64,000 nucleotides of DNA from Macrostomum lignano (taxonomy: Eukaryota), in the NCBI GenBank assembly GCA_002269645.1, contig NIVC01002449.1:1-64000 (forward strand), given 5' to 3'. Made by a program: the position numbers and the translations under genes. A model generated the notes under the pieces. That model did no database searches, was not told where the DNA came from, and saw only the letters and a list, made by a program, of their open reading frames with translations. This document shows positions 1 through 63,965 of this stretch, in pieces; within the stretch, counting starts at the first letter, position 1, and every line of letters starts with the position of its first letter.

Positions 1-3000
1 AGACATCCTTCATGGTCGGCTCCGTTCGAGCGAAACAGGATGTGGAGGACATGGGCGTCTGTGAGATGCTGCAGACATCAGTCGGGTCGGTACGCTACAA
101 GGAAGAGCTTGAAGTAAGAGAGTGCGCATCCTTCCTCGAGACTTCGTCATGGTCGGCTCCGTTCGAGCGAAACAGAGTATGAGGACATGGGCGTCTGTGA
201 GATGCTGCAGACATCGGGTCGACATACGCTACAAGAAGAGCTTGAAGTGAAGAATGCGCATTCGTTCCTTGAGACATCCTTCATGGTCGCTCCGTTCGAG
301 CGAAACAGGATGTGAGGACATGGGCGTCTGTGAGATGCTGCAGACATCAGTCGGGTCGGTACGCTACAAGGAAGAGCTTGAAGTAAGAGAGTGCGCATCC
401 TTCCGAGACTTCGCATGGTCGGCTCCGTTCGAGCGAAACAAGATGTAGGACGGCATGGGCGTCTGTGAGATGCTGCAGACATCGACTCGACAATGCGCTA
501 CAAAGAAGAGCTAGAAGTGAGAGAATGCGCTTCGTTCCTTGAGAGCATCTTCATGGTCGGCTCCGTTGGAGCGAAACAGGATGTGGAGGACATGGGCGTC
601 TGTGAGATGCTGCAGACATCAGTCGGGTCGTACGCTACAAGGAAGAGCTTGAAGTAAGAGAGTGCGCATCCTTCCTCGAGACTTCAGTCGTGGTCGGCTC
701 CGTTCGAGCGAAACAGGATGTGGAGGACATGGGCGTCTGTGAGATGCTGCAGACATCAGTCGACTCGACAATGCGCTACAAGAAGAGCTAGAAGTGAGAG
801 AATGCGCTTCGTTCCTTGAGACATTCCTTCATGGTCGGCCGTTCGAGCGAAACAGAAGTGAGGACATGGGCGTCTGTGAGATGCTGCAGACATCAGTCGC
901 GGTCGGTACGCTACAAGAAGAGCTTGAAGTAAGAGAGTGCGCTCGTTCCTCGAGACATCGTCATGGTCGGCTCCGTTCGAGCGAAACAGGATGTGGAGGA
1001 CATGGGCGTCTGTGAGATGCTGCAGACATCGACTCGACAATGCGCTACAAGAAGAGCTAGAAGTGAAGAGAATGCGCTTCGTTCCTTGAGACATCCTTCA
1101 TGGTCGGCTCCGTTCGAGCGAAACAGGATGTGGAGGCATGGGCGTCTGTGAGATGCTGCAGACATCGGTCGACAATGCGCTACAAAGAAGAGCTTGAAGT
1201 GAGAGAATGCGCTTCGTTCCTTGAGACATCCTCATGGTCGGCTCCGTTCGAGCGAAACAGGATGTGGAGGACATGGGCGTCTGTGAGATGCTGCAGACAT
1301 CAGTCGGGTCGGTACGCTACAAGGAAGAGCTTGAAGTAAGAGAGTGCGCATCCTTCCTCGAGACTTCGGTCATGGTCGGCTCCGTTCGAGCGAAACAGGA
1401 TGTGGAGGACATGGGCGTCTGTGAGATGCTGCAGACATCAGTCTCGACGCTACAAAGGAAGAGCTTGAAGTGAAGAATGCGCTCCTTCCTTGAGACATTC
1501 GTCATGGTCGGCTCCGTTCGAGCGAAACAGGATGTGGAGGACATGGGCGTCTGTGAGATGCTGCAGACATCGGACTCGACAATGCGCTACAAAGAAGAGC
1601 TAGAAGAGAGAATGCGCTTTTCCTTGAGACATCCTTCATGGTCGGCTCCGTTCGAGCGAAACAGGATGTGGAGGACATGGCGTCTGTGAGATGCTGCAGA
1701 CATCGGACTCGACAATGCGCTACAAAGAAGAGCTAGAAGTGAGAGAATGCGCTTCGTTCCTTGAGACATCCTTCATGGTCGGCTCCGTTCGAGCGAAACA
1801 GGATGTGGAGGACATGGGCGTCTGTGAGATGCTGCAGACATCGGACTCGACAATGCGCTACAAAAGAGCTAGAAGTGAAAGAATGCGCTTCGTTCCTTGA
1901 GACATCCTTCATGGTCGGCTCCGTTCGAGCGAAACAGGATGTGGAGGACATGGGCGTCTGTGAGATGCTGCAGACATCAGTCGGGTCGGTACGCTACAAG
2001 GAAGAGCTTGAAGTAAGAGAGTGCGCATCCTTCCTCGAGACTTCGGTCATGGTCGGCTCCGTTCGAAGCGAAACAGGATGTGGAGGACATGGGCGTCTGT
2101 GAGATGCTGCAGACATCAGTCGGGTCGACGCTACAAGGAAGAGCTTGAAGTAAGAATGCGCTTCCTTCCTCGAGACTTCGTCATGGTCGGCTCCGTTCGA
2201 GCGAAACAGGATGTGGAGGACATGGGCGTCTGTGAGATGCTGCAGACATCGGACTCGACAATGCGCTACAAAGAAGAGCTAAATGAGAGAATGCGCTTCG
2301 TTCCTTGAGACATCCTTCATGGTCGGCTCCGTTCGAGCGAAACAGGATGTGGAGGACATGGGCGTCTGTGAGATGCTGCAGACATCGGGTCGACAATGCG
2401 CTACAAGAAGAGCTAGAAGTGAGAGTGCGCATCGTTCCTCGAGACTTCGTCATGGTCGGCTCCGTTCGAGCGAAACAGGATGTGAGGACTGGGCGTCTGT
2501 GAGATGCTGCAGACATCAGTCGGTCGGTACGCTACAAGGAAGAGCTAGAAGTAAGAGAGTGCGCATTCCTTCCTCGAGACTTCGGTCATGGTCGGCTCCG
2601 TTCGAGCGAAACAGGATGTGGAGGACATGGGCGTCTGTGAGATGCTGCAGACATCAGTCGGGTCGGTACGCTACAAGGAAGAGCTTGAAGTAAGAGAGTG
2701 CGCATCCTTCCTCGAGACTTCGGTCATGGTCGGCTCCGTTCGAGCGAAACAGGATGTGGAGGACATGGGCGTCTGTGAGATGCTGCAGACATCGGACTCG
2801 ACAATGCGCTACAAAGAAGAGCTAGAAGTGAGAGAATGCGCTTCCTTCCTTGAGACATCCTTCATGGTCGGCTCCGTTCGAGCGAAACAGGATGTGGAGG
2901 ACATGGGCGTCTGTGAGATGCTGCAGACATCAGTCGGGTCGGTACGCTACAAGGAAGAGCTTGAAGTAAGAGAGTGCGCATCCTTCCTCGAGACTTCGGT

Positions 3001-6000
3001 CATGGTCGGCTCCGTTCGAGCGAAACAGGATGTAGAGGACATGGGCGTCTGTGAGATGCTGCAGACATCGGACTCGACAATGCGCTACAAAGAAGAGCTA
3101 GAAGTGAGAGAATGCGCTTCGTTCCTTGAGACATCCTTCATGGTCGGCTCCGTTCGAGCGAAACAGGATGTGGAGGACATGGGCGTCTGTGAGATGCTGC
3201 AGACATCAGTCGGGTCGGTACGCTACAAGGAAGAGCTTGAAGTAAGAGAGTGCGCATCCTTCCTCGAGACTTCGGTCATGGTCGGCTCCGTTCGAGCGAA
3301 ACAGGATGTGGAGGACATGGGCGTCTGTGAGATGCTGCAGACATCAGTCGGTCGGTACGCTACAAGGAAGAGCTTGAAGTAGAGAGTGCGCATCCTTCCT
3401 CGAGACTTCGGTCATGGTCGGCTCCGTTCGAGCGAAACAAGAAGTAGGGCATGGGCGTCTGTGAGATGCTGCAGACATCAGGACTCGACAATGCTACAAA
3501 GAAGAGCTAGAAGTGAGAGTGCGCTTCGTTCCTTGAGACATCCTTCATGGTCGGCTCCGTTCGAGCGAAACAGGATGTGGAGGACATGGGCGTCTGTGAG
3601 ATGCTGCAGACATCAGTCGGGTCGGTACGCTACAAGGAAGAGCTTGAAGTAAGAGAGTGCGCATCCTTCCTCGAGACTTCGGTCATGGTCGGCTCCGTTC
3701 GAGCGAAACAAGAAGTAGACGGCATGGGCGTCTGTGAGATGCTGCAGACATCGGACTCGACAATGCGCTACAAAGAAGAGCTAGAAGTGAGAGAATGCGC
3801 TTCGTTCCTTGAGACATCCTTCATGGTCGGCTCCGTTCGAGCGAAACAGATGTGAGGACATGGGCGTCTGTGAGATGCTGCAGACATCAGTCGGTCGGTA
3901 CGCTACAAGGAAGAGCTTGAAGTGAGAGTGCGCATCCTTCCTCGAGACTCTTCATGGTCGGCTCCGTTCGAGCGAAACAGGATGTGGAGGACATGGGCGT
4001 CTGTGAGATGCTGCAGACATCAGTCGGGTCGGTACGCTACAAGGAAGAGCTTGAAGTAAGAGAGTGCGCATCCTTCCTCGAGACTTCGGTCATGGTCGGC
4101 TCCGTTCGAGCGAAACAGGATGTGGAGGACATGGGCGTCTGTGAGATGCTGCAGACATCAGTCGGGTCGGTACGCTACAAGGAAGAGCTTGAAGTAAGAG
4201 AGTGCGCATCCTTCCTCGAGACTTCGGTCATGGTCGGCTCCGTTCGAGCGAAACAGGATGTGGAGGACATGGGCGTCTGTGAGATGCTGCAGACATCGTC
4301 GGGTCGGTACGCTACAAGAAGAGCTTGAAGTGAGAGAATGCGCTCCTTGAGACTCCTTCATGGTCGGCTCCGTTCGAGCGAAACAGGATGTGGAGGACAT
4401 GGGCGTCTGTGAGATGCTGCAGACATCGGACTCGACAATGCGCTACAAGAAGAGCTAGAAGTGAAAGAATGCGCATTCGTTCCTTGAGACATCCTTCATG
4501 GTCGGCTCCGTTCGAGCGAAACAGGATGTGGAGGACATGGGCGTCTGTGAGATGCTGCAGACATCGACTCGACAATGCGCTACAAAGAAGAGCTAGAAGT
4601 GAGAGAATGCGCTTCGTTCCTTGAGACATCCTTCATGGTCGGCTCCGTTCGAGCGAAACAGGATGTGGAGGACATGGGCGTCTGTGAGATGCTGCAGACA
4701 TCGGACTCGACAATGCGCTACAAGAAGAGCTTGAAGTAAGAATGCGCATCGTTCCTCGAGACTCCTCATGGTCGGCTCCGTTCGAGCGAAACAGGATGTG
4801 GAGGACATGGGCGTCTGTGAGATGCTGCAGACATCAGTCGGGTCGGTACGCTACAAGGAAGAGCTTGAAGTAAGAGAGTGCGCATCCTTCCTCGAGACTT
4901 CGGTCATGGTCGCTCCGTTCGAGCGAAACAAGGATGTGGAGGACATGGGCGTCTGTGAGATGCTGCAGACATCAGTCTCGACGCTACAAGAAGAGCTTGA
5001 AGTAAGAGAGTGCGCATCCTTCCTCGAGACATCGTTCATGGTCGGCTCCGTTCGAGCGAAACAGGATGTGGAGGACTGATGGGCGTCTGTGAGATGCTGC
5101 AGACATCGGACTCGACAATGCGCTACAAGAAGAGCTAGAAGTGAGAGAATGCGCTTCGTTCCTTGAGACATCCTTCATGGTCTCCGTTCGAGCGAAACAG
5201 GATGTGGAGGACATGGGCGTCTGTGAGATGCTGCAGACATCAGTCGGGTCGGTACGCTACAAGGAAGAGCTTGAAGTAAGAGAGTGCGCTCGTTCCTCGA
5301 GACTTCTCATGGTCGGCTCCGTTCGAGCGAAACAGGATGTGGAGGACATGGGCGTCTGTGAGATGCTGCAGACATCGGACTCGACAATGCGCTACAAAGA
5401 AGAGCTAGAAGTGAGAGAATGCGCTTCGTTCCTTGAGACATCCTTCATGGTCGGCTCCGTTCGAGCGAAACAGGATGTGGAGGACATGGGCGTCTGTGAG
5501 ATGCTGCAGACATCGGACTCGACAATGCGCTACAAGAAGAGCTAGAAGTGAAGAGAATGCGCTCGTTCCTTAGACATCCTCATGGTCGGCTCCGTTCGAG
5601 CGAAACAGGATGTGGAGGACATGGGCGTCTGTGAGATGCTGCAGACATCAGTCGGGTCGGTACGCTACAAGAAAAGCTTGAAGTAAGAGAGTGCGCATCC
5701 TTCCTCGAGACTTCGGTCATGGTCGGCTCCGTTCGAGCGAAACAGGATGTGGAGGACATGGGCGTCTGTGAGATGCTGCAGACATCAGTCGACGGTACGC
5801 TACAAGGAAGAGCTTGAAGTGAGAGTGCGCTCGTTCCTTGAGACTCCTTCATGGTCGGCTCCGTTCGAGCGAAACAGGATGTGGAGGACATGGGCGTCTG
5901 TGAGATGCTGCAGACATCACTCGGGTCGGTGCTACAAGAAGAGCTTGAAGTAGAGAATGCGCATGTTCCTTGAGACTCAGTCATGGTCGGCTCCGTTCGA

Positions 6001-9000
6001 GCGAAACAGGATGTGGAGGACATGGGCGTCTGTGAGATGCTGCAGACATCGGTCGGTACGCGCTACAAGAAGAGCTAGAAGAAGTGAGAGTGCGCATCCT
6101 TCCTCGAGACTCTTCATGGTCGGCTCCGTTCGAGCGAAACAGGATGTGGAGGACATGGGCGTCTGTGAGATGCTGCAGACATCAGTCGGGTCGGTACGCT
6201 ACAAGGAAGAGCTAGAAGTAGAGAGTGCGCTCCTTCCTCGAGACTTCGGTCATGGTCGGCTCCGTTCGAGCGAACCAGATGTGGAGGACATGGGCGTCTG
6301 TGAGATGCTGCAGACATCAGTCGGGTCGGTACGCTACAAGGAAGAGCTTGAAGTAAGAGAGTGCGCATCCTTCCTCGAGACTTCGGTCATGGTCGGCTCC
6401 GTTCGAGCGAAACAGATGTAGACGGCATGGGCGTCTGTGAGATGCTGCAGACATCAGTCGGTCGGTACGCTACAAGGAAGAGCTTGAAGTAAGAGAGTGC
6501 GCATCCTTCCTCGAGACTTCGTCATGGTCGGCTCCGTTCGAGCGAAACAGGATGTGGAGGACATGGGCGTCTGTGAGATGCTGCAGACATCGGACTCGAC
6601 AATGCGCTACAAAAGAGCTAGAAGTGAGAGAATGCGCTTCGTTCCTTGAGACATCCTTCATGGTCGGCTCCGTTCGAGCGAAACAGGATGTGGAGGACAT
6701 GGGCGTCTGTGAGATGCTGCAGACATCAGTCGGTCGGTACGCTACAAGGAAGAGCTTGAAGTAGAGAGTGCGCATCCTTCCTCGAGACTTCGTCATGGTC
6801 GGCTCCGTTCGAGCGAAACAGGATGTGGAGACATGGGCGTCTGTGAGATGCTGCAGACATCGGACTCGACAATGCGCTACAAGAAGAGCTAGAAGTGAGA
6901 GAATGCGCTCGTTCCTTGAGACTCCTTCATGGTCGGCTCCGTTCGAGCGAAACAGGATGTGGGGACATGGGCGTCTGTGAGATGCTGCAGACATCAGTCG
7001 GGTCGGTACGCTACAAGGAAGAGCTTGAAGTAAGAGAGTGCGCATCCTTCCTCGAGACTTCGGTCATGGTCGGCTCCGTTCGAGCGAAACAGGATGTGGA
7101 GGACATGGGCGTCTGTGAGATGCTGCAGACATCAGTCGGGTCGGTACGCTACAAGGAAGAGCTTGAAGTAAGAGAGTGCGCATCCTTCCTCGAGACTTCG
7201 GTCATGGTCGGCTCCGTTCGAGCGAAACAGGATGTGGAGGCATGGGCGTCTGTGAGATGCTGCAGACATCGGACTCGACAATGCGCTACAAAGAAGAGCT
7301 AGAAGTGAGAGAATGCGCTTCGTTCCTTGAGACATCCTTCATGGTCGGCTCCGTTCGAGCGAAACAGGATGTGGAGGACATGGGCGTCTGTGAGATGCTG
7401 CAGACATCGGACTCGACAATGCGCAAGAAAGAGCTAGAAGTGAGAGAATGCGCTTCGTTCCTTGAGACATCCTTCATGGTCGGCTCCGTTCGAGCGAAAC
7501 AGGATGTGGGGACATGGGCGTCTGTGAGATGCTGCAGACATCGGACTCGACAATGCGCTACAAAGAAGAGCTAGAAGTGAAGAATGCGCTCGTTCCTTGA
7601 GACATCCTTCATGGTCGGCTCCGTTCGAGCGAAACAGGATGTGGAGGACATGGGCGTCTGTGAGATGCTGCAGACATCAGTCGGGTCGGTACGCTACAAG
7701 GAAGAGCTTGAAGTAAGAGAGTGCGCATCCTTCCTCGAGACTTCGGTCATGGTCGGCTCCGTTCGAGCGAAACAGATGTGAGGCATGGGCGTCTGTGAGA
7801 TGCTGCAGACATCAGTCGGGTCGTACGCTACAAAGAAGAGCTGAAGTAGAGAGTGCGCTCGTTCCTTGAGACATCCGTCATGGTCGGCTCCGTTCGAGCG
7901 AAACAGGATGTGGAGGACATGGGCGTCTGTGAGATGCTGCAGACATCAGTCGGTCGACAATGGCTACAAGAAGAGCTTGAAGTGAGAGTGCGCATCGTTC
8001 CTTGAGACTCTTCATGGTCGGCTCCGTTCGAGCGAAACAGGATGTGGAGGACATGGGCGTCTGTGAGATGCTGCAGACATCAGTCGGGTCGACGCTACAA
8101 AGAAGAGCTAGAAGTGAGAGAATGCGCTCGTTCCTTGAGACTTCCTCATGGTCGGCTCCGTTCGAGCGAAACAGGATGTGGAGGACATGGGCGTCTGTGA
8201 GATGCTGCAGACATCAGTCTCGACAGTACGCTACAAGAAGAGCTAGAAGTGAGAGAATGCGCTCGTTCCTCGAGATCCTTCATGGTCGGCTCCGTTCGAG
8301 CGAAACAGGATGTGGAGGACATGGGCGTCTGTGAGATGCTGCAGACATCAGTCGGTCGGTACGCTACAAGGAAGAGCTTGAAGTAAGAGAGTGCGCATCC
8401 TTCCTCGAGACTTCGGTCATGGTCGGCTCCGTTCGAGCGAAACAGGATGTGGAGGACATGGGCGTCTGTGAGATGCTGCAGACATCAGTCGGGTCGGTAC
8501 GCTACAAGGAAGAGCTTGAAGTAAGAGAGTGCGCATCCTTCCTCGAGACTTCGGTCATGGTCGGCTCCGTTCGAGCGAAACAGGATGTGAGGCATGGGCG
8601 TCTGTGAGATGCTGCAGACATCAGTCGGTCGACGCTACAAGGAAGAGCTTGAAGTAAGAGAGTGCGCATCCTTCCTCGAGACTTCGTCATGGTCGGCTCC
8701 GTTCGAGCGAAACAGGATGTGGAGGACATGGGCGTCTGTGAGATGCTGCAGACATCGGACTCGACAATGCGCTACAAAGAAGAGCTAGAAGTGAGAGAAT
8801 GCGCTTCGTTCCTTGAGACATCCTTCATGGTCGGCTCCGTTCGAGCGAAACAGGATGTGGAGGACATGGGCGTCTGTGAGATGCTGCAGACATCAGTCGG
8901 GTCGGTACGCTACAAGGAAGAGCTTGAAGTAAGAGAGTGCGCATCCTTCCTCGAGACTTCGGTCATGGTCGGCTCCGTTCGAGCGAAACAGGATGTGGAG

Positions 9001-9910
9001 GACATGGGCGTCTGTGAGATGCTGCAGACATCAGTCGGGTCGGTACGCTACAAGGAAGAGCTTGAAGTAAGAGAGTGCGCATCCTTCCTCGAGACTTCAC
9101 ATGGTCGGCTCCGTTCGAGCGAAACAGGATGTGGAGGACATGGGCGTCTGTGAGATGCTGCAGACATCGTCGACAATGCGCTACAAAGAAGAGCTAGAAG
9201 TGAGAGAATGCGCTTCGTTCCTTGAGACATCCTTCATGGTCGGCTCCGTTCGAGCGAAACAGGATGTGGAGGACATGGGCGTCTGTGAGATGCTGCAGAC
9301 ATCAGTCGGTCGGTACGCTACAAGGAAGAGCTTGAAGTAAGAGAGTGCGCATCCTTCCTCGAGACTTCGTCATGGTCGGCTCCGTTCGAGCGAAACAGGA
9401 TGTGGAGGACATGGGCGTCTGTGAGATGCTGCAGACATCGGACTCGACAATGCGCTACAAAGAAGAGCTAGAAGTGAGAGAATGCGCTTCGTTCCTTGAG
9501 ACATCCTTCATGGTCGGCTCCGTTCGAGCGAAACAGGATGTGGAGACATGGGCGTCTGTGAGATGCTGCAGACATCAGTCGGTCGGTACGCTACAAGGAA
9601 GAGCTTGAAGTAAGAGAGTGCGCATCCTTCCTCGAGACATCCTTCATGGTCGGCTCCGTTCGAGCGAAACAGGATGTGGAGGACATGGGCGTCTGTGAGA
9701 TGCTGCAGACATCAGTCGGGTCGGTACGCTACAAGGAAGCTTGAAGTAAGAGAGTGCGCATCCTTCCTCGAGACTTCGTCATGGTCGGCTCCGTTCGAGC
9801 GAAACAGGATGTGGAGGACATGGGCGTCTGTGAGATGCTGCAGACATCGGACTCGACAATGCGCTACAAAGAAGATCTAGAAGTTAGAGAGTGTGTCAGC
9901 TTTCTTGAAC
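1..9910. repeat. 138-bp tandem array with two interspersed variants (A/B), ~72 copies, truncated by the window start
   Basis: The motif catggtcggctccgttcgagcgaaacaggatgtggaggacatgggcgtctgtgagatgctgcagacatc recurs every ~136-138 bp (e.g. ATG at 2588 and 2726). Confidence 0.98.
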
Positions 9911-10137
9911 GTCCTTTTGTTCAGAGTGAACTTTTGGTTCATCCTATTTCTTCAAGCGTTGGTGTTCAGTGCAACCAGCCGATTGGTTCTACGTCCGTTT
10001 GTTTTGAGGTTTCGACATCGACTGGGTTTATTTCGACTTTCGCAACATTTGCCGATGCGTCGGCTCAAGTTTTTCAAGAAGTCCGTGGAACTGGTCTTCT
10101 TATTGAAGAGAAAATTTTCGTGACTCCTTTCGATTAA
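1..10137 (+). CDS. 3' part of a giant tandem-repeat protein: ~72 x 46-aa repeats (MVGSVRAKQDVEDMGVCEMLQTS[VGSV/DSTM]RYKEELEVRECASFLETS[V/F]) running into a unique ~80-aa C-terminus; 5' end lies outside the window; many indels, probably assembly errors
   Basis: Unit is 138 bp = 46 codons with no stop in this + frame (intact run 2588-3382). Variants A and B differ at 15 codons, 10 of them synonymous. The frame continues through a diverged last copy (RYKEDLEVRECVSFLE) into unique sequence to TAA at 10135-10137, followed by AT-rich UTR-like DNA with AATAAA at ~10463. Confidence 0.75.
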
Positions 10138-10704
10138 TTTTTTTAATTTGATACAAAATGGATAAAATTTTATGATTTTTCTAAGTAGCAAGAAACTTTC
10201 GCCAGTTTTAATCTCCTCAACGTTTTTGTGCTTTTTTAGCTTCAGAAACGTTGAAATATTTATTAGTTTTGTGTTTTAGGTAGCTAAGAAGTAGATGGGC
10301 CCCTGCTTTTGCTATATTGCAATTGGGGATCTTTTTAGTTGTATTTAACTAAACTTGGTGCAGCGAAATTCGAGTTATTGGCTGTCAGCTGTAAATTTTA
10401 TGCAGCTTTTTAAAATCTTACAAATTAAGGTAGCATGAAGTGAGCAGGTTAATGCTTAATGGAATAAAATCACAGTACCATTAAGGTAGTCTAACTTATA
10501 TATACTTTTTATTGCATACGTGGTGCAAGCCAGTGAGTTGTGGCCTGTCTATTGTTTTAATATCGGTCCAAATTACCCGTACAATATAAAGTTGCTTTTT
10601 TCGTTTCAACGAGTACCCTATTTTCTTGTGGTCATGAATATCTTTTAAACATTGAAATCAAACATTCATGGATTATGCAGGTATTTAAAAATAATTTTGT
10701 TGAT

Positions 10705-11025
10705 CAGTGGCGGATCCAGGAATTCTGTTTGGGAAGTGGCGGACTGTCAGGGGGCGCCAATGACAATCACAAATGGGGGCGCCAGGGGGCCAATGTTGCG
10801 CCAGTGGAGCTAGGTTTAGTTTATTACCCTTTGCTGTCTTAGTTGGGAGGGGCACTAAAAATCTTCATATGGGGTGGGCCAGTATCAGGGTGGGGGTCGC
10901 GCAGCAGATGTCAGTCTTTAGCACCTGGATGAATCCTTTCCGTAAGGTCGGTGTGCATTGGCGTCAGTGGGGGCGCCATAAACCCATGACCGAAATTTTC
11001 CCCCCGCCCCCTAAATCCGCCCTTG
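10705..11025. mobile_element. hAT-type MITE (~320 bp)
   Basis: Imperfect 15-bp TIRs cagtggcggatccag / ctaaatccgcccttg. Flanking 8-mers ttgttgat (10697-10704) and ttgttgct (11026-11033) match 7/8, consistent with an 8-bp TSD. GC-rich interior in AT-rich DNA. Confidence 0.65.
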
Positions 11026-13216
11026 TTGTTGCTTAACATTATTTTTACTAAATAACACAATTCAATGTGAAAGTGAAACTGATTACAGTATAGTGACTAA
11101 CATTAGATTTATCTTTTGTTTATTTGAACAATAATATATGTTACGTTTTACTGTGACGCATGCAGTAGTGCATCATTCGATTTTTTCAATTTTGCTCGTG
11201 GTAGTTATTACATTACTGTTATTACAGTAAAATTATTATGTTTGATATCCAGTTTTTAGTTTTTTCAATTTACTTCCTAATATATTTATTTAAAGTTAGT
11301 TTAAAAACAGTGCTGAGCTGGCCTTGGATTTTTTTTGCTATAAAACGGTCTCTTTGGGTGAAGATATTGCTCTTTGCTAGAGACATTGCTGCAAAATACT
11401 ATGTGCTTCAGAATAGAGTCATACAAGTACATGTACGTCATTTTAAGTAGTTTTTCTATCATTCATAAAATAAATAGTAAATTCGTATCATTAGATAATC
11501 ATATACGATGCTCTATCATTCGTTGAAACTTACTCTACATTTGCTTAAGTCTTTAACATTGTAAAATGGTTTGGTTTTACGTTACCCTACGTGCGTACTT
11601 GTACCAGTAAGATAGCTTGTATATACGCGTATACACGTGTTCTATATTGCTACATCTACATGTGTGATAGCTATGATGCACGGACGCGTGGCGACAATGA
11701 TGCAATTCGATATTACTATATAGTAAACAATGATAAATTATTATTATTACACTTAAATTATTATTATAATAGTAACGCGCGACGTAACTATCACCCACAC
11801 CTGCGCCTCAAGTCACCTGCACGCTTCTGCTATCGCCCCGCGCAGCTGCCACTTCGGCCGAGGCCCGCAAATCAGCCAAGTACACCGACCTGGGCGACCA
11901 CGATGACTTCCACCCGGTCGGTGTGAAAATGCTGCAGTTGCCTTCGGCCCCCATGCCCTGAAGCTATACATGTAGTTGTCGCCCTTGCGGCCTGCATCCG
12001 CGCTAATTCTGGGGAGCGGGGATCCGGGTGCGCATCTTCCGCCGACTCGGGGCAGTTGTTCCCAGGCTAGAAACGCCCCGCACCATTTTCGCCTCCCACG
12101 CCCACGCCACACTCACGTCTACGGGAGGCCCGCTGCTGAGTTTTGTTTCTTGCTTTTTACATCCTATGGGTAATTTTTTAACTACTTTGATGCTTAGCTC
12201 ATTTCGAGTCACAAATTGTTATTATTGTTATTATTAATATTATCATTATTATAAATAATATCATTCATAGATTAGATGATACTGCTGCACCCCAGCCACC
12301 CGTCCCCAATCATGTACGTTGCTATTGCTATCGATTACTCAGCCCCTCTCACCCCTTCGCTTCCCAGTGTCAAAAACTCCGGCGAATCGCGCAGCGAAAT
12401 GTCCCGGGAAACTGCAGCGAATCACCGGAGAAAAAACGCCGTTTTTTTACAGCCTACTTATAGTAGCATACTATGCGCATGAAATTAATCGAATCCTTTA
12501 TAATTAGGCTGGTAGTTTACATTATAGGTTCACCGTGATAAAAAAATAGTGAAGACTATTTCATAACACAATTTAATAGAATTATTTAATTTTATAGATT
12601 ATCAGATTTTATATTTTATCAGTATTTTATTATGCTTACGAAAATATACCAGTATAAAAAATGTCAGCAAATTAATAGCAGATAGAGTGATATTGCATTT
12701 TAATATATGCGCATGCATATTGCATACTGCTATTGGATGCAGTGAGAAACACACTACGTTAAATTCAATATTTTCACAGAGCAATTGATTAGGGCAGAAA
12801 ATTTCATTTTAAACTTTGTAAAGCCAAATGTAAGCGTTATCAAACTTGTAAAAGAATAATTGTTTAGGAACGCTCTGAAAGGACTGATTGATAAGCAAGG
12901 AAGACAAGTTACAATTTGAAGAAAAACATATGCATTTATGAGTAAAGGTAATTAAGACATAAATCATATATATTGCCGCGCATGTATGAACATGTTATAT
13001 ACAATTAGCATTAGCACTAAAGATGCAAAAAATTACCACTTACACGATTGAAATAGGTTAAGGAAAGAAATTACGAAAGTAAACAGTTAATTCATGTTAC
13101 AAAAGAAGAGTAAAAGGCGCACATTGACTGATGTATACGTATGCTTTATGATACTTTTAATAAATACAGGCTTTCTCTCGGTCGCACGTTCATTACCTAC
13201 ATGGCGTCGCAAGCAG

Positions 13217-13476
13217 GGGCCTTTTCATATTGCTTGCTCTGGTTCCAGAACCAGAACCAATTTGTGAAGTATAACTTTTTGTCTCCATAACTAGAGGGAG
13301 ATACGTACTATAAAGTTTTTATTATTGAATGACAATCGCCAAGAAGAAAGTGAAAAATTGTGCTAAGTTAGGTTGTTAAGGCAGTCGAATATTAACAGAG
13401 TTTAATAGTTATACTGCTGTTTTTCTTGGAATTCCGAACCGATTCTGGTTCTGGAATTGGTAATATGAAAAGGCCC
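13217..13476. mobile_element. PIF/Harbinger-like MITE (260 bp) inserted in a Gypsy RT relic
   Basis: TIR gggccttttcatatt at 13217 and its reverse complement ending at 13476, plus a subterminal inverted ttccagaaccagaa. 3-bp direct flank CAG on both sides (13214-13216, 13477-13479). Confidence 0.65.
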
Positions 13477-13479
13477 CAG

Positions 13480-14040
13480 GATCTGGACGAACACCGTCGG
13501 ATGAAATCACGTGTGGCTGACATACTGAAGAAACACCAACTTTCAGTTTCTTGCGATTAAGTTTTAAATTCGACTGACGGGCTTCATTGAGCACCTTGAG
13601 TAGCTTCTGATCGTGCCATCAACTGACTTTCACGAGTGATCGCAAGCGTTCACACTGCAATCAACTGACATATACTGAGGAGAATGAGTGGGCGAACGCA
13701 AGTTTTCCAATTTTTTTCGCGAGTAATACTGTGCGCACATATCTCCAGCTGAGCCCAGATTCGTGCATCTTTTCAGCAAGTTTGAGAAAACTACTTTGTG
13801 CTTTGAATTCAATACCAGTGTACAGTCTGTATCAGAGTACAAAGGCCAGCGCTCTTATTGATATAACTGGCGCGAGCTAACAAAAAACCAAGCACCTACA
13901 CTTTTCCGATCGTCCTTTTTCCTGGTATTTCGATTGTCAATCAGGGTGCCGAAGGTCGTATATAAACAGGATTTTCTTGCACATTGTTTACCAGAGGTTC
14001 CAGCGGCAACCAACAGGCGCTGTTTTTTCACACTTGCCAT
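13480..14040 (-). mobile_element. Degenerate Ty3/Gypsy LTR-retrotransposon reverse-transcriptase fragment
   Basis: The minus strand encodes HDQKLLKVLNEARQSNLKLNRKKLKVGVSSVCQPHVISSDGVRPDP, matching the Gypsy RT C-terminal pattern (HD..L..VL.RL...LKLN..KC.F....V.YLGH.IS..G..PDP). A weaker upstream match is SCLYTTFGT. Frameshifted and stop-riddled. Confidence 0.6.
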
Positions 14041-14051
14041 TTCGCTTACGT

Positions 14052-14468
14052 CAGGGGGTCAGCAAACTTTTTTACCCCAAGGGCCAGAGCAGATAAAGAA
14101 CCTAGAGCATGACTGCGTCCGGAGGAATTGAAGGAGGAGATGAGAGAGGGATCATAAAAAAGAAGGAAGGGAGATGGGAGAAGGGAGAGGCGAGGGAATA
14201 AAGGAGCAAAGATGAGAGGAGAGGAGAGATGAATTAGGCTAGGAGAGTAGAAAAGAGAAGAGAGAGGGATCGAGTAGAGGAATAAAGAGAGAGGAGAGAA
14301 GAAGAGGGGAGAGAAGAAGAGTGGAGAGAAGAGAGAAGAGCACTGAGAAGAGACAAACATTGAGCGGGCCGAGTTACTATTGTGCAGTTTCAAAGGACCG
14401 CGAGGGCCGGATGAAGAGACTTTGCGGGCCGCATGTGGCCTGCGGGCCTGAGTTTGCCGCGACCCCTG
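14052..14468. mobile_element. hAT (Charlie/Tip100-like) non-autonomous element with internal GA-rich microsatellite
   Basis: Ends cagggggtcagcaaac ... gtttgccgcgacccctg, with the typical subterminal gcgggccgcatgtggcc. Purine-rich tract at ~14130-14350. The TSD is degenerate (gcttacgt/gctcatat). Confidence 0.65.
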
Positions 14469-14999
14469 GCTCATATGATGGAAAATAATAAAAATAGTTA
14501 ATAACCTGCTGGGGTGTGATGACCAATCAATTTTGAAGCGACAGTCAGACTAGACAGAGATTTGTTAAAATAGAGTGGCTTGAGTTGAATTTCGTGTGTT
14601 GCGCATTTTTGGGTGCTGTCTAAGAGGCAAGCTGTAGTTAGCTGCGATTTCAAGTGAACACAGAAAAATTATGAAATTCTGTGTGGTCAAACGAGTCATG
14701 TGATTTGGTCTTTCATTTGATTGCAATGTGAATGAGCCTTAAAGCGTGCTACCTTACCTGAATAATTTTACATTCTTTCTTATTTGGGCCCCCGAAGCTA
14801 GTGGAGACTAGATTGGTAGTAAGGTATCTAAAAAGTAAAAATAACTTAGGCCTCTCAGCTAGAACTAAAACTATAGTTTCCAAAGCTTTTTAAACTTAGC
14901 AGCCGCAGTGAGCAATTTATCTCTGCATGGCAACGTCCACTTTGTTTGAATCGGTAAAATGTTTGCGTAAAGCCAGTGGTGGAAATTCGAACGAAATAA

Positions 15000-15430
15000 T
15001 TTAGCGCAGATTGAAAAAAAGAAAAGAAAATCAGCAACATATTAAACTCTACAAAAACGCCTATCTCTACAAAAAAATCTGCAAGCCCGACCTGTCAAAT
15101 TACTTTCCATGCACATTTAGAAACAAAAAATTCTTAACAACTCTCCTAAAACTGAAATGCGAGATTACACCCAACTTTTTTTTCTCAAGAACCATGTAAA
15201 ATGTGTGGAGCGCGAATTGGTTCTGACATTCTACACTACTTGACCGAATGTCCACAAACTGAAGAGATCAGGAAAAAATACTTCTGCGATCAATACCTCT
15301 TAAATGGCAATCAAATACACAAGATAGGATATGCTACAAATGAAAAAAGAGTCAGAAAAGAACTCACTGGTGTAGCTAAAATATATGAAGTCATGAATAG
15401 CTAAAACAGTTAAACAAACTGAATCAGATA
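15000..15430 (+). mobile_element. 3' relic of a non-LTR retrotransposon ORF2 (C-terminal CCHC-type zinc knuckle)
   Basis: PCKMCGARIGSDILHYLTECPQTEEIRKKY fits CxxC..H....CP...R of LINE ORF2 C-termini. Frameshifted relative to the upstream segment. Confidence 0.45.
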
Positions 15431-16022
15431 CATTAGCAGTGTAATAAATCCGCTTTTCAGTTATTTATTCAAAAATAAGCGCTTTCAAAAATACTGCTAT
15501 TGTAATTACGGTTATATATGCTTAGATATATTGGCATAAAATAGTTATTTTTTTTCTTTATTTTTTTTCTCTTTTCGATTTTTCGTTCGAACTTTACTCG
15601 CAACTTATCGTAATCAAAGTAATCTCGCAATTAAAGCTAATACCTCGTAATTCGTACTCATTTTTGTATTAATATTTATACTCGATGTTAGTTGTTAGTC
15701 GTCACTTTTCGCCCAAAAATACCGTAAAAATTCTGGCGCGCTTTCAAATACTTTATCTTTTACAATAACTCGTCATGCAATCGTCGTCAACGTCAAATCG
15801 TCTTTAAACCTCTATTTCGAAAATTTTTCCAAATACACAGCTCTATAATATATTGGCCAAACAGGCTAATCGCCTGAGCCAACTTCTTACTACTAATTGA
15901 TTCCGCGGCCCTGCTGCAATTATTATCATCGACATCGATTATGAAGATTCTCCAGCACATTATGCACGTAATCGTTCCTAGTCATGCAAGATCGTTGTCT
16001 TAATTACCATGCACTAACCAAA

Positions 16023-16133
16023 GGGAGTCATTTCGTCATCCACCAGGCGCAATTGTGTTGGGAGTCATTTCGTCATTCACCAAGCGCAATTGTGTTGGGA
16101 GTCATTTCGTCATCTACCAAGCGCAATTGTGTT
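16023..16133. repeat. 3 x 37-bp tandem repeat (gggagtcatttcgtcatccaccaggcgcaattgtgtt)
   Basis: Three adjacent near-identical copies seen directly. Confidence 0.85.
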
Positions 16134-17456
16134 TATTCTAAGTGAAATTTAGTATATAGGCCTATATGTTAGGCCTATGTCAATAGGCCTATCTCCATCA
16201 GGCTATAAAATATAGACAAAAGTTGCTTAGAATTAGTTTTTATAGGCCCCTATCATCATCTGTAATTTTATTTTAATATCTAGAAAGTCTAGAAGACTTG
16301 GCATCAATTTATTGGATCAAAATTTCAGTTTAACTTTGTGCCATGTGTTCATATTTGTAGGCCTAACTAGTACGTAGGCCTAACCTTTGTACATTTGTAA
16401 TTTTGTACCTTTTGGCCAGGAGGCATTGCAGCTATCCTGCAGAATCATTTGTTAAACTCAATCTATATGCACATTTTTAGCTATTGACATGAAATTTTCG
16501 AAATTATAGCATTGCATTTACATTGTCATCAATCAATTTTTTTATCACTTGGTATCAAAGACCTACTTAGTAGGCCTATGAAATTTTGGCACTTATGGCA
16601 ATAGGCATAGACCTATGGTTTGCTTTAAAGTATTTGTAATTTTGGTATCCTAAGACTATGTATAGGTGCCACTAATATCAAATTTGTTAATAGGCCTTCT
16701 CCTTATCTAGGCCTAATTCAACAACTCAAAGCAGATCAAAGCATGCCCAGTTGATAAAATGAAACAACTTTTGAATTATAGTTATTCAAAGCCAAATGCA
16801 TATAGGCCTAGGGCCTAAAGCATTTAGCATTTGTTCAAAATTTTATTAATAGGCACCTAGTTTATTGGCCTATGGCTAATATTAAATATTTATTTCTTTA
16901 TCATTGTCTAGGCTTATTGTTCTTTTTAAAATATCTCTTCTTTGTTATAGGGGCCTAATTGATAAGATAAAAGAATTTATAAGAGAATGAAATATGATTT
17001 TTTTATTTATTTCTAATTATATTAGGCCTAGCCTACTTCTCAAAAGATAAAAATTAATCAAGTAAAAAGTTAGGTCTATTAGAAATACTATAAAAGACAA
17101 ATAATCATAATGACTAGGCTAATAAATAAAATACATTAAAAAATGTTGAAAATTAAGGAGACAAAAGGATTTATAACTTTTTTTTTAATTCACTAATTTA
17201 AAAAAAAAGTTTTTACTCAGGCCCAAAAAATAAAAATTTTCAAATAAAATAAAAAATATTAAAAAACATTTTTCAAAATCTCATTGTAGTCTTTATGTTA
17301 AAGCACAACTTAAGAAAGTATTAAAATCATCAATGTTAGGCAAGTTTCAGCTTGAAAAGTAAGTAACTCATAGTTAAATAACTTTCAATTCCAAAGAAAA
17401 TAACTTTTGGCACTTGTTCTGGTGCTGGTACCTTTAAAACAAAGAGTAGTAGTATA

Positions 17457-19592: not shown

Positions 19593-21663
19593 GAGAACTC
19601 CACTGTTAGTGTAAGAGTTGCTCGTGGTCTGAATGGGCATTTAGAAGGTCTACTAGATGAGACTGATTGGTCTGGAGAATTCTGCTTTGTACAAGCAGCT
19701 GATACTCAGTTTGGACTTATTAGCCGGTATGTTTTTATTTTATTCTTTTAATAAATGTACTTTTCAAACTAATGAATTTAAGCTTATAAACTCCATAATT
19801 ATATACTGTTGTGTCAGGAATAAAATAAAAAACCACCAATAGAGCAAGGTCTCAAAGCCTGCTCAAGGTCTGTCTTTTCTCAGCTGTCTTCTTTCTTCTC
19901 TTTTTTTCTTCTCCTCTCCTCTCCTTTCTCCCTATCTCTCTTCTCCATCTGGCAATGGAGGTAAAAAAATTCACTATAGTTCACTATTATTAATTATCTA
20001 CATATAATATTCTTCTATTTCTACTGTGACAAGTATAGCATATAGGATTTAATATAGTTAAATTTTTCTTGAAGTTCAGACTGTCAGTTTATTTTCCACT
20101 ATAATAATGCCTACTAAAAATACAAGTAATATTCTACTAGTCTACTTCAAGTAAACGGCGATGCAAATTCGCGCAGAAAAACAAGCTGATTAGTAATAAT
20201 TCTTAACCAATATCAATGACAGCTACATCGACAAGGCGGATCCTCAGCCAGCGGATTCGCCAACCAATCGCGATGCGGACATTGCCAAGGAGGTGCACTT
20301 AACTCGCCGACTTGTCAGCGAAGTGAACGCAATTTCGCCGGCGCCTCGTTTTCTCATCGTCTGCGGCGATATGATCGACGCATTTCCTGTTGCCGTTAGA
20401 GACGAAAATGGCGAACAGAGGCGCGAGCGGGAACAGAGGCGACAGCGTCAGCTGCGAGCGTTTGCTGACTGTTTTAGACAGTTGCGATCTGATGTTCCTT
20501 TGGTGTGCGTCTGCGGCAATCACGATATTGGCGATGCGCCCACGCCTGAATCTGTGAGCAGCTCTTCGTGTCTTGAGGACCTTTGGAATGAGAGATCCCC
20601 AGTTGCTGGAGCAGCCTCTAAGATCCACAGTTGCTGGGCCAGGCTTCCAGAGTGTCAGTTGCTGGGCCAGCCTCCCAGATATTCAGTTGCTGGGCCAGCC
20701 TCCCAAATCCTCAATTGCTGGGCCAGCCTCTCAAATCCTTAGTTGCTGGGCCAGCCTCCAAGCTCCTCAGTTGCTGGGCCAGCCTCCCAGATCCTCACTT
20801 TCTGGACCAGCCTCCCAGATCCTCAGTTGCTGGGCCAGCCTCCCAGATCCTCAGTTGCTGGGGCAGCCTCCCAGATCCTCAGTTGCTGGGGCAGCCTCCC
20901 AGATCCTCAGTTGCTGGGGCAGCCTCCCAGATCCTCAGTTGCTGGGCCAGCCAGGCCCAGCCTCCTAGAGTGTCAGTTGCTGGGCCAGCCTCCCAGATCC
21001 TCAGTTTCTGGGCCAGCCTCCCAGATCCTCAGTTGCTGGGCCAGCCTCCCAGATCCTCAGTTTCTGGGCCAGCCTCCCAGATCCCCAGTTGCTGGGCCAG
21101 CCTCGGGTTATCATAAAAAAACTCCAAAAACTCCGCCACAGGTGGGCATCTACCGTCAGACCTGGGGCGACGACTACTTCGAGTTCTGGATCGGTGGCTG
21201 CCAGATGCTGGTAGTGAATTCTCAGTATTACGTCAACAGCAGCCAAGTACCGGAGGAGAAGTCCGCAATGACTCGCTGGCTGATGACACGCCTCAGCCAA
21301 AGCAAACCGACGCATCGCATTTTATTCATGCACGTGCCGCCGTTCCTTACTGACGCCCACTCGGATGCCGACAGCTACTTCACTTTGCCCAAAGCTGACC
21401 GTCTGCCACTGCTGGACGCCTGCCTTGAGGCCGGAGTGTCGGCCATATTCTGCGGTCACTATCATCGTAATGCTGGCGGAGTCTATCGGGATAAACTACC
21501 GGTTGTTGTCACTTCGGCTGTTGGCGCTCAGATTGGCAACGATCGTCATGGCTATCGTTTAGTAAACGTTGCTAAGGACGCTGTTCGGCATAGTTACGTT
21601 GATTTGGCGTGCGAACCGGTTAATCTAACAAATGGCGCGGATGGTTGCAAGGCGTGCCAGTGA
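19593..21663 (+). CDS. CPPED1: Calcineurin-like metallophosphoesterase CPPED1; exons 19593-19726, 20223-20553, 21142-21663 (~328 aa plus a missing start Met)
   Basis: Motifs AADTQFGL, LIVCGDMI, VCGNHDIG, TWGDDYF, FMHVPPF, FCGHYHRNAGG and SAVGAQIG match CPPED1. GT-AG sites with consistent phases (2, 0). Confidence 0.92.
20600..21105 (+). repeat. 28-bp minisatellite (cagttgctgggccagcctcccagatcct) in CPPED1 intron 2
   Basis: Tandem copies seen directly. The same family recurs at three other loci in the window. Confidence 0.95.
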
Positions 21664-29540: not shown

Positions 29541-30170
29541 CCAGCCTCCCAGATCCTCAGTTGCTGGGCCAGCCTCCCAGATCCCCAGTTGCTGGGCCAG
29601 CCTCCCAGATCCCCAGTTGCTGGGCCAGCCTCCCAGAGTGTCAGTTGCTGGGCCAGCCTCCCAGATCCTCAGTTGCTGGGGCAGCCTCCCAGATCCTTAG
29701 TTGCTGGGCCAGCCTCCCAGATCCTCACTTTCTGAACCAGCCTCCCAGATCCTCAGTTGCTGTGGCAGCCTCCCAGATCCTCAGTTTCTGGGCCAGCCTC
29801 CCAGAGTGTCAGTTTCTGGGCCAGCCTCCCAGATCCTCAGTTGCTGGGCCAGCCTCCCAGATCCTCAGTTGCTGGGCCAGCCTCCCAGATCCTCAGTTGC
29901 TGGGCCAGCCTCCCAGATCCCCAGTTGCTGGGCCAGCCTCCCAAAGTGTCAGTTGCTGGGCCAGCCTTCCAGCTCCTCAGTTTCTGGGCCAGCCTCCCAG
30001 AGTGTCAGTTTCTGGGCCAGCCTCCCAGATCCTCAGTTGCTGGGCCAGCCTCCCAGATCCTCAGTTGCTGGGCCAGCCTCCCAGCTCCTCAGTTTCTGGG
30101 CCAGCCTTCCAGCTCCTCAGTTGCTGGGCCAGCCTTCCAGCTCCTCAGTTTCTGGGCCAGCCTCCCAGAG
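29541..30170 (+). repeat. 28-bp minisatellite family, copy immediately upstream of the SRR1-domain gene
   Basis: Same unit as 20600-21105. Confidence 0.95.
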
Positions 30171-32294: not shown

Positions 32295-32842
32295 ATCCCT
32301 ACCAAATCGAACATCGCCCTCTTGGAATCGCCCCTGAAAATCGCTCTCTGTAAATCGCCCCTGAAAATCGCCCCTGAAAATCGTCCTCTGGGAATCCCCC
32401 TAAAAATCACCTCTTGGAATCTCCGCCACTGCAAGTCACCATTCTCTGTCAACGCTTTGACCTTTGACCTCTCATTGATACGTTAGCCTAAAAAGACGTG
32501 TTTTTTAGAGATTTTGTTAACAATCAGCTTACTCATAGAAAATATTTTGCTCGTTATGAGGATTTGACGAAAAAAATACACCATCTTTGTTAACTACATT
32601 CGCTTGCTTGGTTATTACTAGATAAACTGAACCCGGTCTTGCTTGACGAACTTATTTGTTTTTTTACACCTGTCATAGTATCTAAGGTAATTTTGTTCCA
32701 GCTCTGATAGACGATAAGACCGCAACTATTCACCTCTATAACATCTGAGGGCTGCTATCTGCGAATCTTGTGCATGCTTATTGAATGCAAATATAGTTTG
32801 TCGGATGTTGCTCTTGGTTGCCACCAGCCTCCCAGAAGTCCC

Positions 32843-33085
32843 AGATCCTATTTCTGGGCCAGCCTTTCAGATCCTCAGTTGCTGGGCCAGCCTCCCAGAT
32901 CCTCAGTTGCTGGGCCAGCCTCCCAGAGTGTCAGTTGCTGGTCCAGCCTCCCAGATCCTCAGTTGCTGGGCCAGCCTCCCAGATCCTCAGTTGCTGGGCC
33001 AGCCTCCCAGATCCTCAGTTGCTGGGCCAGCCTCCCAGATCCTCAGTTGCTGGGCCAGCCTCCCAGATCCTCAGTTGCTGGGCCA
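32843..33085 (+). repeat. 28-bp minisatellite family, copy upstream of the amidase gene
   Basis: About 8 near-perfect units. Confidence 0.93.

Positions 33086-53956: not shown

Positions 53957-63965
<10,009 letters not shown>

What the first reader, a model, noticed from the sequence alone, without database searches (positions are those of the whole stretch)
1..10137. A 'satellite' that is really a giant coding exon: ~72 x 46-aa repeats under purifying selection
Seen: the 138-bp unit is stop-free in exactly one frame (+). Its two variants differ at 15 codons, 10 of them synonymous, and all nine differences in codons 28-45 (RYKEELEVRECASFLETS) are silent third-position changes (aag/aaa, ctt/cta, gta/gtg, gag/gaa, gca/gct, tcc/tcg, ctc/ctt, act/aca, tcg/tcc). 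The last, most diverged copy again keeps the peptide (tcg to agc, still Ser) and reads without a break into a unique C-terminus ending TAA at 10137. Non-coding satellites do not diverge this way. Inference: this is the 3' end of a >3,300-aa repeat protein I do not recognise, which repeat-masking pipelines would hide. The repeat has two Cys and an acidic/hydrophobic beta-like pattern, so a structural, secreted or scaffold role is possible.
Basis: partly seen in the sequence, partly recalled or inferred. Interest (0 to 1): 0.88.

Follow-up and report, generated by a model that had tools for sequence, protein, structure and literature searches.

The report
Giant plakin-like repeat gene, flatworm
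The 10-kb "satellite" is very probably the repetitive 3' coding end of a giant plakin-type cytoskeletal protein gene of the flatworm Macrostomum lignano, and the many frameshifts in this copy look like assembly errors rather than gene decay.

Summary
The window is Macrostomum lignano contig NIVC01002449.1, bases 1-64000; the array abuts the contig start. There are 73 units of 138 bp. The two unit variants are stop-free in one frame only. Ten of the 15 differing codons are silent (dN/dS 0.12). The last unit runs into a 75-aa tail ending at TAA 10135-10137.

However, 84% of the indels sit at the sites where unit variants differ, and none sit in the invariant 26-nt block. This points to a polishing artefact.

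A near-identical duplicate locus keeps 2,519 repeat codons open with one stop. On that contig, and on a third, the array is preceded by a plakin-type SH3/spectrin domain (desmoplakin, plectin, E about 1e-9). On the third contig one 2,200-codon open stretch runs from unique sequence into the repeats. The NCBI gene models here are fragmentary.

The 46-aa acidic unit matches no Pfam or PDB family and was found only in M. lignano. I read it as a lineage-specific plakin-like cytolinker; its function is inferred.

The parts
1..9818 (+). Tandem array of 138-bp (46-codon) units: a partial unit at 1-49, then 72 units starting at ATG 50. Two main variants, A (..QTSVGSVRYKEELEVRECASFLETSV..) and B (..QTSDSTMRYKEELEVRECASFLETSF..), largely alternate. 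The array runs into the contig start.
   Evidence: TRF; anchor matches; unit alignment; variant order; window 1-20137 is identical to NIVC01002449.1:1-20137.
2555..3379 (+). Longest uninterrupted stretch of the repeat frame in the window: 275 codons, six units.
9819..9914 (+). Last and most diverged repeat unit (MGVCEMLQTSDSTMRYKEDLEVRECVSFLERP). It differs from variant B mostly by silent changes.
9915..10137 (+). Unique C-terminal tail (FVQSELLVHP...EEKIFVTPFD) and stop codon TAA at 10135-10137.
   Evidence: Translation. It has the same end as NCBI model PAA57748.1. It is 93% identical to PAA87650.1 at the duplicate locus.
10463..10468 (+). AATAAA, a candidate polyadenylation signal 326 nt after the stop. 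This is inferred only.
2588..10137 (+). Span of annotated gene model BOX15_Mlig000986g17 (PAA57748.1, 164 aa). It joins 2588-~2830 to 9877-10137 and skips about 52 units, which looks like the mapping of a transcript with collapsed repeats. Two further fragment models lie at 2183-8586 and 6086-9108.
   Evidence: annotation method in PMC5730564

Best explanation
Window 1-10137 is the 3' part of one very large protein-coding exon of a Macrostomum lignano gene.

Architecture, seen at the duplicated loci:
- a non-secretory N-terminus (MASLETPDN...);
- a plakin-type domain, that is, spectrin-like repeats with an embedded SH3_10;
- about 500 aa of unique sequence and old, degenerate repeats;
- 57-aa (171-bp) units;
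- a long homogeneous array of 46-aa (138-bp) units organised as an A/B dimer;
- a diverged last unit;
- a 75-aa tail.

The array evolves by unequal exchange (concerted evolution), while selection keeps the peptide, especially R-Y/F-K-D/E-E-x-K/E-V/L-x-E-C-A-S-x-L-E.

Most of the 174 indels that break the frame in the window are artefacts of consensus and short-read polishing in a two-variant array at a contig end. They are not mutations.

Inferred function: an intracellular giant cytolinker. The plakin domain would dock at a junction or membrane complex. The strongly acidic repeat region (net charge about -5 per unit) would form a long rod or a multivalent binding platform, in place of the plakin-repeat domains of canonical plakins.

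Shown here: coding-type divergence; open frames at the sister loci; linkage to the plakin domain at the sister loci; clustering of the indels at variant sites.
Inferred: transcription and translation of this copy; the artefact origin of the indels; the intracellular cytolinker role.

The confidence given (0.72) is for the statement as a whole. Coding alone is about 0.85, and the cytolinker role alone about 0.5.
For: Coding signal.
- Only one frame is stop-free.
- A versus B has 10 silent and 5 replacement codons, P=1.5e-4, dN/dS 0.12. The last unit gives 0.18.
- All pairwise comparisons among unit types and paralogues give 0.12-0.66.

Sister locus L001 (NIVC01000222.1).
- The 3' flank is 98.8% identical to the window by blastn over 7.6 kb, with 0.56% mismatch by global alignment.
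- Its array is open over 1-3369 and 3373-7557, that is 2,519 codons with one TAA.
- All 52 units there are 138 or 171 bp, and the 46 re-aligned 138-bp units contain no indel.

Linkage to the plakin domain.
- L003 has a 2,200-codon open stretch running from unique sequence into 28 repeats.
- On the L001 contig, PAA87639.1, which carries SH3_10, lies upstream. The 171/138-bp array starts about 1.2 kb after the end of that model.
- UniProt models A0A1I8G870 and A0A1I8G762 join SH3_10 to the repeats.
- SH3_10 scores 45.5 bits against a cut-off of 22.8.
- PDB matches are desmoplakin 3r6n (E 3.4e-9) and plectin 3pe0 (E 1e-8), covering the SH3 and its spectrin-repeat flanks.

Artefact origin of the indels.
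- 147 of 174 indel events lie within 1 nt of a variant site, where 43% is expected (P=5e-29).
- There are no indels in the invariant 26-nt block across 72 units.
- The same bias is seen in L004: 35 of 40 events, P=9e-9.
- The assembly is Canu on PacBio reads, polished with Pilon using multi-mapping Illumina and RNA-seq reads (PMC5730564).
- The array sits at a contig end.

Transcription.
- The annotation is built from RNA-seq transcripts, and three + strand models overlap the array.

Intracellular location.
- The N-terminus has no hydrophobic signal-like segment.
Against: - As assembled, the window copy cannot be translated beyond 275 aa. No read-level data were available to prove that the indels are errors.
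- The N-terminus of this particular copy is not on this contig, so its link to a plakin domain rests on the sister loci.
- 34 kb between L004 and L001 was not seen, so continuity of the array there is assumed.
- The C-terminal tail shows no clear constraint between the two copies: 12 of 291 nt differ, dN/dS is 0.6, and this is as diverged as the adjacent 3' UTR.
- L001 carries one in-frame TAA.
- There is no direct RNA, peptide or localisation evidence.
- AlphaFold2 gave no usable model, with pLDDT 37 and 26, so the rod or platform idea is untested.
Confidence: 0.72

Rival explanations
1. The window copy is a decaying duplicate, a pseudogene, of a functional gene that lies elsewhere. The frameshifts are real, tolerated because the DV1 line carries redundant chromosome copies.
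For: 42 of 72 units are out of frame. The assembly holds at least two 3' ends and three 5' ends of this gene. The genome has 180 Mb in duplicated blocks that are at least 95% identical (PMC5730564). The tail has dN/dS 0.6 between copies.
Against: Real mutations would not pick out the variant sites (P=5e-29), nor spare the invariant blocks completely. 72 of 73 anchors are base-perfect. The flanks differ by 0-5%, which is too young for 174 indels with almost no substitutions. The same kind of indel appears in parts of the sister array, while another 7.5 kb of that array is clean.
Confidence: 0.12
2. It is coding, but for a secreted or extracellular structural or adhesive repeat protein. This was the first reader's alternative, and it would resemble the giant adhesive proteins Mlig-ap1 and Mlig-ap2.
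For: There are two Cys per unit. M. lignano is known to make giant repetitive secreted adhesion proteins of 5,407 and 14,794 aa (PMC6410801).
Against: The linked N-terminus has no signal-like hydrophobic segment. It carries a plakin SH3/spectrin domain, which to my knowledge is a cytoplasmic module. The first Cys is not conserved among paralogues. The units are acidic, with pI about 4.5, whereas Mlig-ap1 is extremely basic, and both adhesive proteins carry extracellular interaction domains such as vWD, TSP-1, EGF and C-type lectin. None of those domains was found here.
Confidence: 0.07
3. It is a non-coding satellite whose open frame and silent-looking differences arose by chance or by a 3-nt periodic mutation bias.
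For: It is highly homogeneous, sits at a contig end, has a 138-bp period typical of satellites, and the frame is broken as assembled.
Against: The silent/replacement pattern is found in one frame only. The sister locus has 2,519 open codons, whereas the other five frames carry at least one stop per unit. All unit lengths are multiples of 3: 138, 171 and 309. The motif is conserved at about 40% amino-acid identity in paralogues whose synonymous sites are saturated. The frame is continuous with unique coding sequence at both ends.
Confidence: 0.02

Closest known systems
Plakin family cytolinkers (desmoplakin, plectin, envoplakin/periplakin; invertebrate Shot and VAB-10)
   Same: The gene that carries this array at the sister loci has the family's signature, an SH3 (Pfam SH3_10) flanked by spectrin-like repeats. 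Its best PDB matches are the plakin domains of desmoplakin and plectin. It is very large, and the C-terminal repeat modules are encoded in one very large exon. Compare the large plakin-repeat exon of shot (PMC2173965 abstract).
   Different: No plakin repeat (PF00681) was detected, and no CH, GAS2 or EF-hand domain. The repeat is a new 46/57-aa acidic unit with no Pfam or PDB match. It was found only in M. lignano among 1.84 billion representative proteins.
Epiplakin (EPPK1)
   Same: It is a plakin-family protein made of many tandem repeat domains encoded in a single exon. It shows intragenic copy-number variation, and its repeat number is notoriously hard to determine by standard sequencing (PMC8782857). 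The assembly problem is the same as the one seen here.
   Different: Epiplakin consists only of plakin repeat domains and lacks the plakin domain. This protein has the plakin-type domain but a different and much shorter repeat.
Mlig-ap1 / Mlig-ap2, giant repetitive adhesion proteins of M. lignano
   Same: They come from the same species, are giant (5,407 and 14,794 aa), have large repetitive regions and no homologues in NCBI nr (PMC6410801).
   Different: They are secreted, and Mlig-ap1 has extremely basic KR-rich regions; both carry extracellular interaction domains such as vWD, TSP-1, EGF and C-type lectin. Here the units are acidic, none of those domains is present, and the N-terminus is plakin-type.
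Existing database entries: PAA57748.1, PAA87650.1, PAA76341.1, PAA76340.1, PAA87639.1, A0A1I8G870, A0A1I8G762
   Same: They are the same gene family and in part the same locus. PAA57748.1 is a model on this very contig that ends at the same stop codon.
   Different: All are fragments of 96-1,135 aa, named 'hypothetical protein' or 'Desmoplakin SH3 domain-containing protein'. None represents the array. No paper in the held library mentions them.

Membership tests
Plakin family | [quoted passage not shown] | tested here: met
   Tested on the genes that carry this array at the sister loci (P0010, P0011, P0009). SH3_10 scores 45.5 bits against a cut-off of 22.8. phmmer against PDB matches residues 89-305 to desmoplakin 3r6n (E 3.4e-9) and plectin 3pe0 (E 1e-8), covering the SH3 and helical flanks.
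Plakin family | The plakin domain lies in the same gene as the window's own array | not testable with these tools
   The contig begins inside the array. Linkage is shown only for the sister copies: on the same contig for NIVC01000222.1, and in the same open frame in L003.
Plakin family | C-terminal plakin repeat domains (Pfam PF00681). These are typical of plakins that bind intermediate filaments but are not universal in the family. | tested here: not met
   No PF00681 hit at E<=1 for the window repeats or tail, nor at E<=0.1 for P0001, P0002, P0009 and P0010. The repeat profile finds nothing in PDB at E<=10.
Spectraplakins (Shot / MACF1 / VAB-10B type) | N-terminal calponin-homology actin-binding domain, and a C-terminal EF-hand/GAS2 module | tested here: not met
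   No such Pfam hits in P0009 or P0010 or in the window tail. The ORF upstream of the start Met is closed by a stop. Alternative upstream exons were not excluded.
Non-coding satellite DNA | No reading-frame constraint: substitutions are spread over codon positions, unit lengths are unconstrained, and stops occur in all frames | tested here: not met
   One frame is stop-free and dN/dS is 0.12-0.66. Unit lengths are 138, 171 and 309 bp, all multiples of 3. The sister locus has 2,519 open codons.
Mlig-ap adhesive proteins | Secreted, with KR-rich basic regions (Mlig-ap1) and domains such as vWD, TSP-1, EGF and C-type lectin (PMC6410801) | tested here: not met
   Unit pI is 4.4-4.6. None of these domains was found.

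The most novel reading that the evidence does not exclude
A Macrostomum-specific plakin-domain protein of well over 10,000 aa. It could reach about 17,000 aa if the array on NIVC01000222.1 is continuous from about 47 kb to about 100 kb. In this reading the ancestral filament-binding plakin repeats have been replaced by a newly evolved 46-aa acidic module, maintained by concerted evolution as a 276-bp dimer. That would make it a new class of cytoskeleton-binding or spacer repeat, and one of the largest proteins in flatworms.
Probability: 0.3. Interest if true: 0.6.

Novelty: new variant of a known kind. Interest (0 to 1): 0.48.

Why it matters
The case shows how a giant coding array can be fragmented, frameshifted and cut at contig ends in a long-read assembly polished with short reads. 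A protein that may be among the largest in a model flatworm then survives in databases only as hypothetical fragments of 96-1,135 aa.

Biologically, it adds a lineage-specific branch to the plakin family, in which the usual C-terminal repeats are replaced by a new unit. M. lignano has transgenesis and RNAi, so the function can be tested directly, for example in epidermal or muscle attachment, the terminal web, or adhesive-organ anchor cells.

The array is also a clean example of purifying selection acting together with concerted evolution in a coding tandem repeat.

Tried and rejected
- The word-indexed protein search with A+B+tail found nothing. A repeat profile recovered only PAA87650.1. That index evidently misses proteins which the exhaustive HMMER search did find.
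- P0004, P0005 and P0006 are unrelated repetitive proteins and were discarded after reading them.
- The Pfam 'hits' to the repeats (RRM_9, H2TH_5, PBP2, T6SS_Tdi1_C and others) have no single stretch that passes on its own. They are sums over repeats and were rejected.
- AlphaFold2 was run on 155 aa without an alignment (pLDDT 37.5, helices) and on three units with a 10-row alignment (pLDDT 25.7, strands). The two models contradict each other, so neither was used and no fold search was run.
- Rfam and tRNA scans of the window found nothing.
- An exact look-up of the BTB ORF was not on record.
- Literature and supplement searches for the locus tags, and for Macrostomum together with plakin, found nothing relevant.
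- A first version of the indel test across loci was spoiled by fuzzy unit boundaries. It was redone.
- Identity with Mlig-ap1/2 was considered and rejected.
Full report
**1. What is in the window**

TRF finds one array at 10-9893 with period 138, 72.8 copies, 88% matches and 4% indels. A 24-nt anchor occurs 73 times on the + strand only, and 72 copies are identical; shuffles give none. The array is GC-rich (0.54) and the flank falls to 0.39.

Aligning the units shows two main variants, A and B, that largely alternate. They differ at 18 nt. Only one of the six frames is stop-free in both, and it reads:
- MGVCEMLQTSVGSVRYKEELEVRECASFLETSVMVGSVRAKQDVED (A)
- MGVCEMLQTSDSTMRYKEELEVRECASFLETSFMVGSVRAKQDVED (B)

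In that frame 10 differing codons are silent and 5 are not. The other five frames give 0-6 silent. Random placement of 18 changes reaches 10 silent codons in 0.015% of trials. NG86 gives dN 0.063, dS 0.512 and a ratio of 0.12.

The last unit differs from B by 10 codons, 6 of them silent, including TCG>AGC (ratio 0.18). It continues into a unique tail that ends at TAA 10135-10137. The only AATAAA in the next kilobase is at 10463.

**2.

The assembled sequence is not an open frame. Each + frame has 86-110 stops in 1-10500, and the longest open stretch is 275 aa, at 2555-3379. Unit lengths run from 130 to 139. Only 18 of 72 units are 138 bp, and 42 have a length that is not a multiple of 3.

The indels are not placed at random:
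- 147 of 174 events lie within 1 nt of a site where unit variants differ, against 43% expected (P=5e-29).
- The invariant first 26 nt of the unit has no indel in 72 units. The second invariant block has 5.

Mutation has no reason to respect variant sites. Consensus calling from reads of mixed unit types does.

**3. Where the window comes from**

An exhaustive HMMER search with the last unit plus tail found six proteins in 1.84 billion. Three are real, and all three are from Macrostomum lignano. PAA57748.1 (164 aa) is encoded on NIVC01002449.1 of assembly GCA_002269645.1. Bases 1-20137 of that contig are identical to the window, so the array abuts the contig start.

According to the genome paper (PMC5730564):
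- The assembly is Canu on PacBio reads, polished with Pilon using Illumina and RNA-seq reads.
- Tandem and simple repeats make up 15% of the genome.
- 180 Mb lies in duplicated blocks at least 95% identical, owing to extra chromosomes in the DV1 line.
- The annotation is a genome-guided transcript assembly, not an ab initio prediction.

Three + strand models overlap the array. PAA57748.1 joins 2588-~2830 to 9877-10137 and skips about 52 units, as expected for a transcript with collapsed repeats. This is indirect evidence of + strand transcription.

**4. Sister loci**

*L001 (NIVC01000222.1:90281-110571).* It holds a duplicate of the array and flank. The flank is 98.8% identical by blastn over 7.6 kb, or 0.56% mismatch in a global alignment. 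Its repeat frame is open over 1-3369 and 3373-7557, which is 2,519 codons with one TAA. All 52 units there are 138 or 171 bp, arranged as a strict two-unit higher-order repeat with dN/dS of about 0.16 between the subunits. The 46 re-aligned 138-bp units contain no indel. Its last 2.4 kb shows a few frameshifts.

*L004.* Another part of the same contig's array has 16 of 47 units off-length, with 35 of 40 indels at variant sites (P=9e-9). Error density therefore varies within one array, which again points to the assembly.

**5. The rest of the gene**

On the L001 contig, PAA87639.1 (723 aa, SH3_10) lies upstream. After its last exon come unique sequence, 171-bp units and then the 138-bp array. 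The 34 kb between L004 and L001 was not retrievable.

On a third contig (L003) a single 2,200-codon open stretch runs from unique sequence through old, degenerate repeats into 28 units. Two UniProt models from another annotation also join the SH3_10 region to the repeats.

The N-terminal region scores 45.5 bits on Pfam SH3_10 against a cut-off of 22.8. It matches the plakin domains of desmoplakin (3r6n, E 3.4e-9) and plectin (3pe0, E 1e-8) across the SH3 and its helical flanks. The N-terminus has no hydrophobic signal-like segment.

A more distant tandem paralogue (PAA49746.1 / PAA76339.1) lies just upstream. It has its own 46/57-aa repeats in a 309-bp higher-order unit.

Across all unit types the conserved core is R-Y/F-K-D/E-E-x-K/E-V/L-x-E-C-A-S-x-L-E. 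The first Cys varies. All pairwise dN/dS values are 0.12-0.66, and synonymous sites are saturated between the oldest pairs.

**6. What the repeat is not**

- No real Pfam domain matches it.
- A repeat profile finds no PDB sequence at E<=10.
- It has no plakin repeat (PF00681).
- The units are acidic: pI about 4.5 and net charge -4.5 to -5.5.
- AlphaFold2 gave pLDDT 37 and 26 with contradictory secondary structure, so the fold is unknown.
- It is not Mlig-ap1 or Mlig-ap2: those are secreted, Mlig-ap1 is extremely basic, and both carry extracellular interaction domains such as vWD, TSP-1 and EGF.

**7. Interpretation**

The array is coding and is the 3' part of a giant plakin-domain gene. I put that at about 0.85.

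The window's frameshifts are mainly assembly artefacts (about 0.8 given coding). The alternative of a decaying duplicate cannot be excluded without reads.

The cytolinker function is inferred from the N-terminal domain alone (about 0.5).

One weak point is that the tail differs at 12 of 291 nt between the two copies, with dN/dS 0.6. That is no better conserved than the adjacent 3' UTR.

**8. Novelty**

Fragments of this gene are in NCBI and UniProt as hypothetical or 'Desmoplakin SH3 domain-containing' proteins. No paper in the held library mentions them, or links Macrostomum with plakins.

The closest parallels are the large plakin-repeat exon of Drosophila shot (PMC2173965) and single-exon, copy-number-variable epiplakin (PMC8782857).

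I file it as a new variant of a known kind: it has the plakin family's signature N-terminal domain, joined to a new, lineage-restricted repeat.

Noticed in passing
window 10138-17405 versus L001 10292-17584: Divergence between the two gene copies falls with distance from the array. It is 4.1% in the coding tail, 5.0% in the first 400 nt after the stop, 1.25% in the next 1.6 kb, and 0 of 5000 nt beyond 2 kb. Gene conversion or polishing with multi-mapped reads could explain this, but neither was tested.
   Followed up: partly
window 1-9850; L004 27851-34526; L001 1-7560: The window's array next to the tail is built of 'MGV / QDVED' unit types, like the 5' part of the sister array (L004). The sister array next to its tail (L001) is a strict dimer of 'MGF..B' and 'A..QEVDG' units. 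The two copies therefore differ in array composition although their flanks are almost identical.
   Followed up: partly
L001 3370-3372: A single in-frame TAA (CAA>TAA in a 171-bp unit) interrupts 2,519 otherwise open repeat codons. It could be an error, a polymorphism or a real truncation.
   Followed up: no
L003 1-5690 and L004 2-3250: A tandem paralogue (PAA76339.1 / PAA49746.1 type) lies directly upstream of the plakin-like gene. It also has SH3_10, with its own 46/57-aa repeats in a 309-bp higher-order unit (13 copies, 99% identical), followed by 69-bp repeats.
   Followed up: partly
L004 13562-18399: Retroelement-like ORFs of 333, 966 and 340 aa lie inside the span of the N-terminal gene model. 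One has a zinc-knuckle-like motif and another an integrase-like end. This is probably an LTR retrotransposon inserted in an intron.
   Followed up: no
window 20593-21104, 29541-30169, 31367-31755, 32839-33085: The same 28-bp minisatellite (CCAGCCTCCCAGATCCTCAGTTGCTGGG) recurs at four places among the genes. Long spurious ORFs run through it, and one merges with what appears to be an exon of the annotated Metallophos gene.
   Followed up: no
window 41303-41901; 37281-38164; 16023-16133: Other tandem arrays: 113 bp x 5.3 at 98% identity; 16 bp x 55; and 37 bp x 3. The last is conserved at the sister locus (L001 16203-16313).
   Followed up: no
window 19593-57024: Neighbouring genes, by ORF and Pfam: Metallophos (from the precomputed annotation) at about 19.6-21.7 kb; weak, sub-cut-off BTB/BACK at 22898-24079 (-); RRM (sub-cut-off) at 25027-25512; amidase at 33337-33897 and onward; NHL (sub-cut-off) at 43478-44236; SRCR at 54303-54830; kringle at 56386-57024.
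   Followed up: partly
L003 about 29.7-31.2 kb: A scaffold gap of 1,505 N interrupts the array on NIVC01000828.1. After the gap the sequence resembles the start of the large exon again, which suggests either a scaffolding artefact or a tandem duplication.
   Followed up: no
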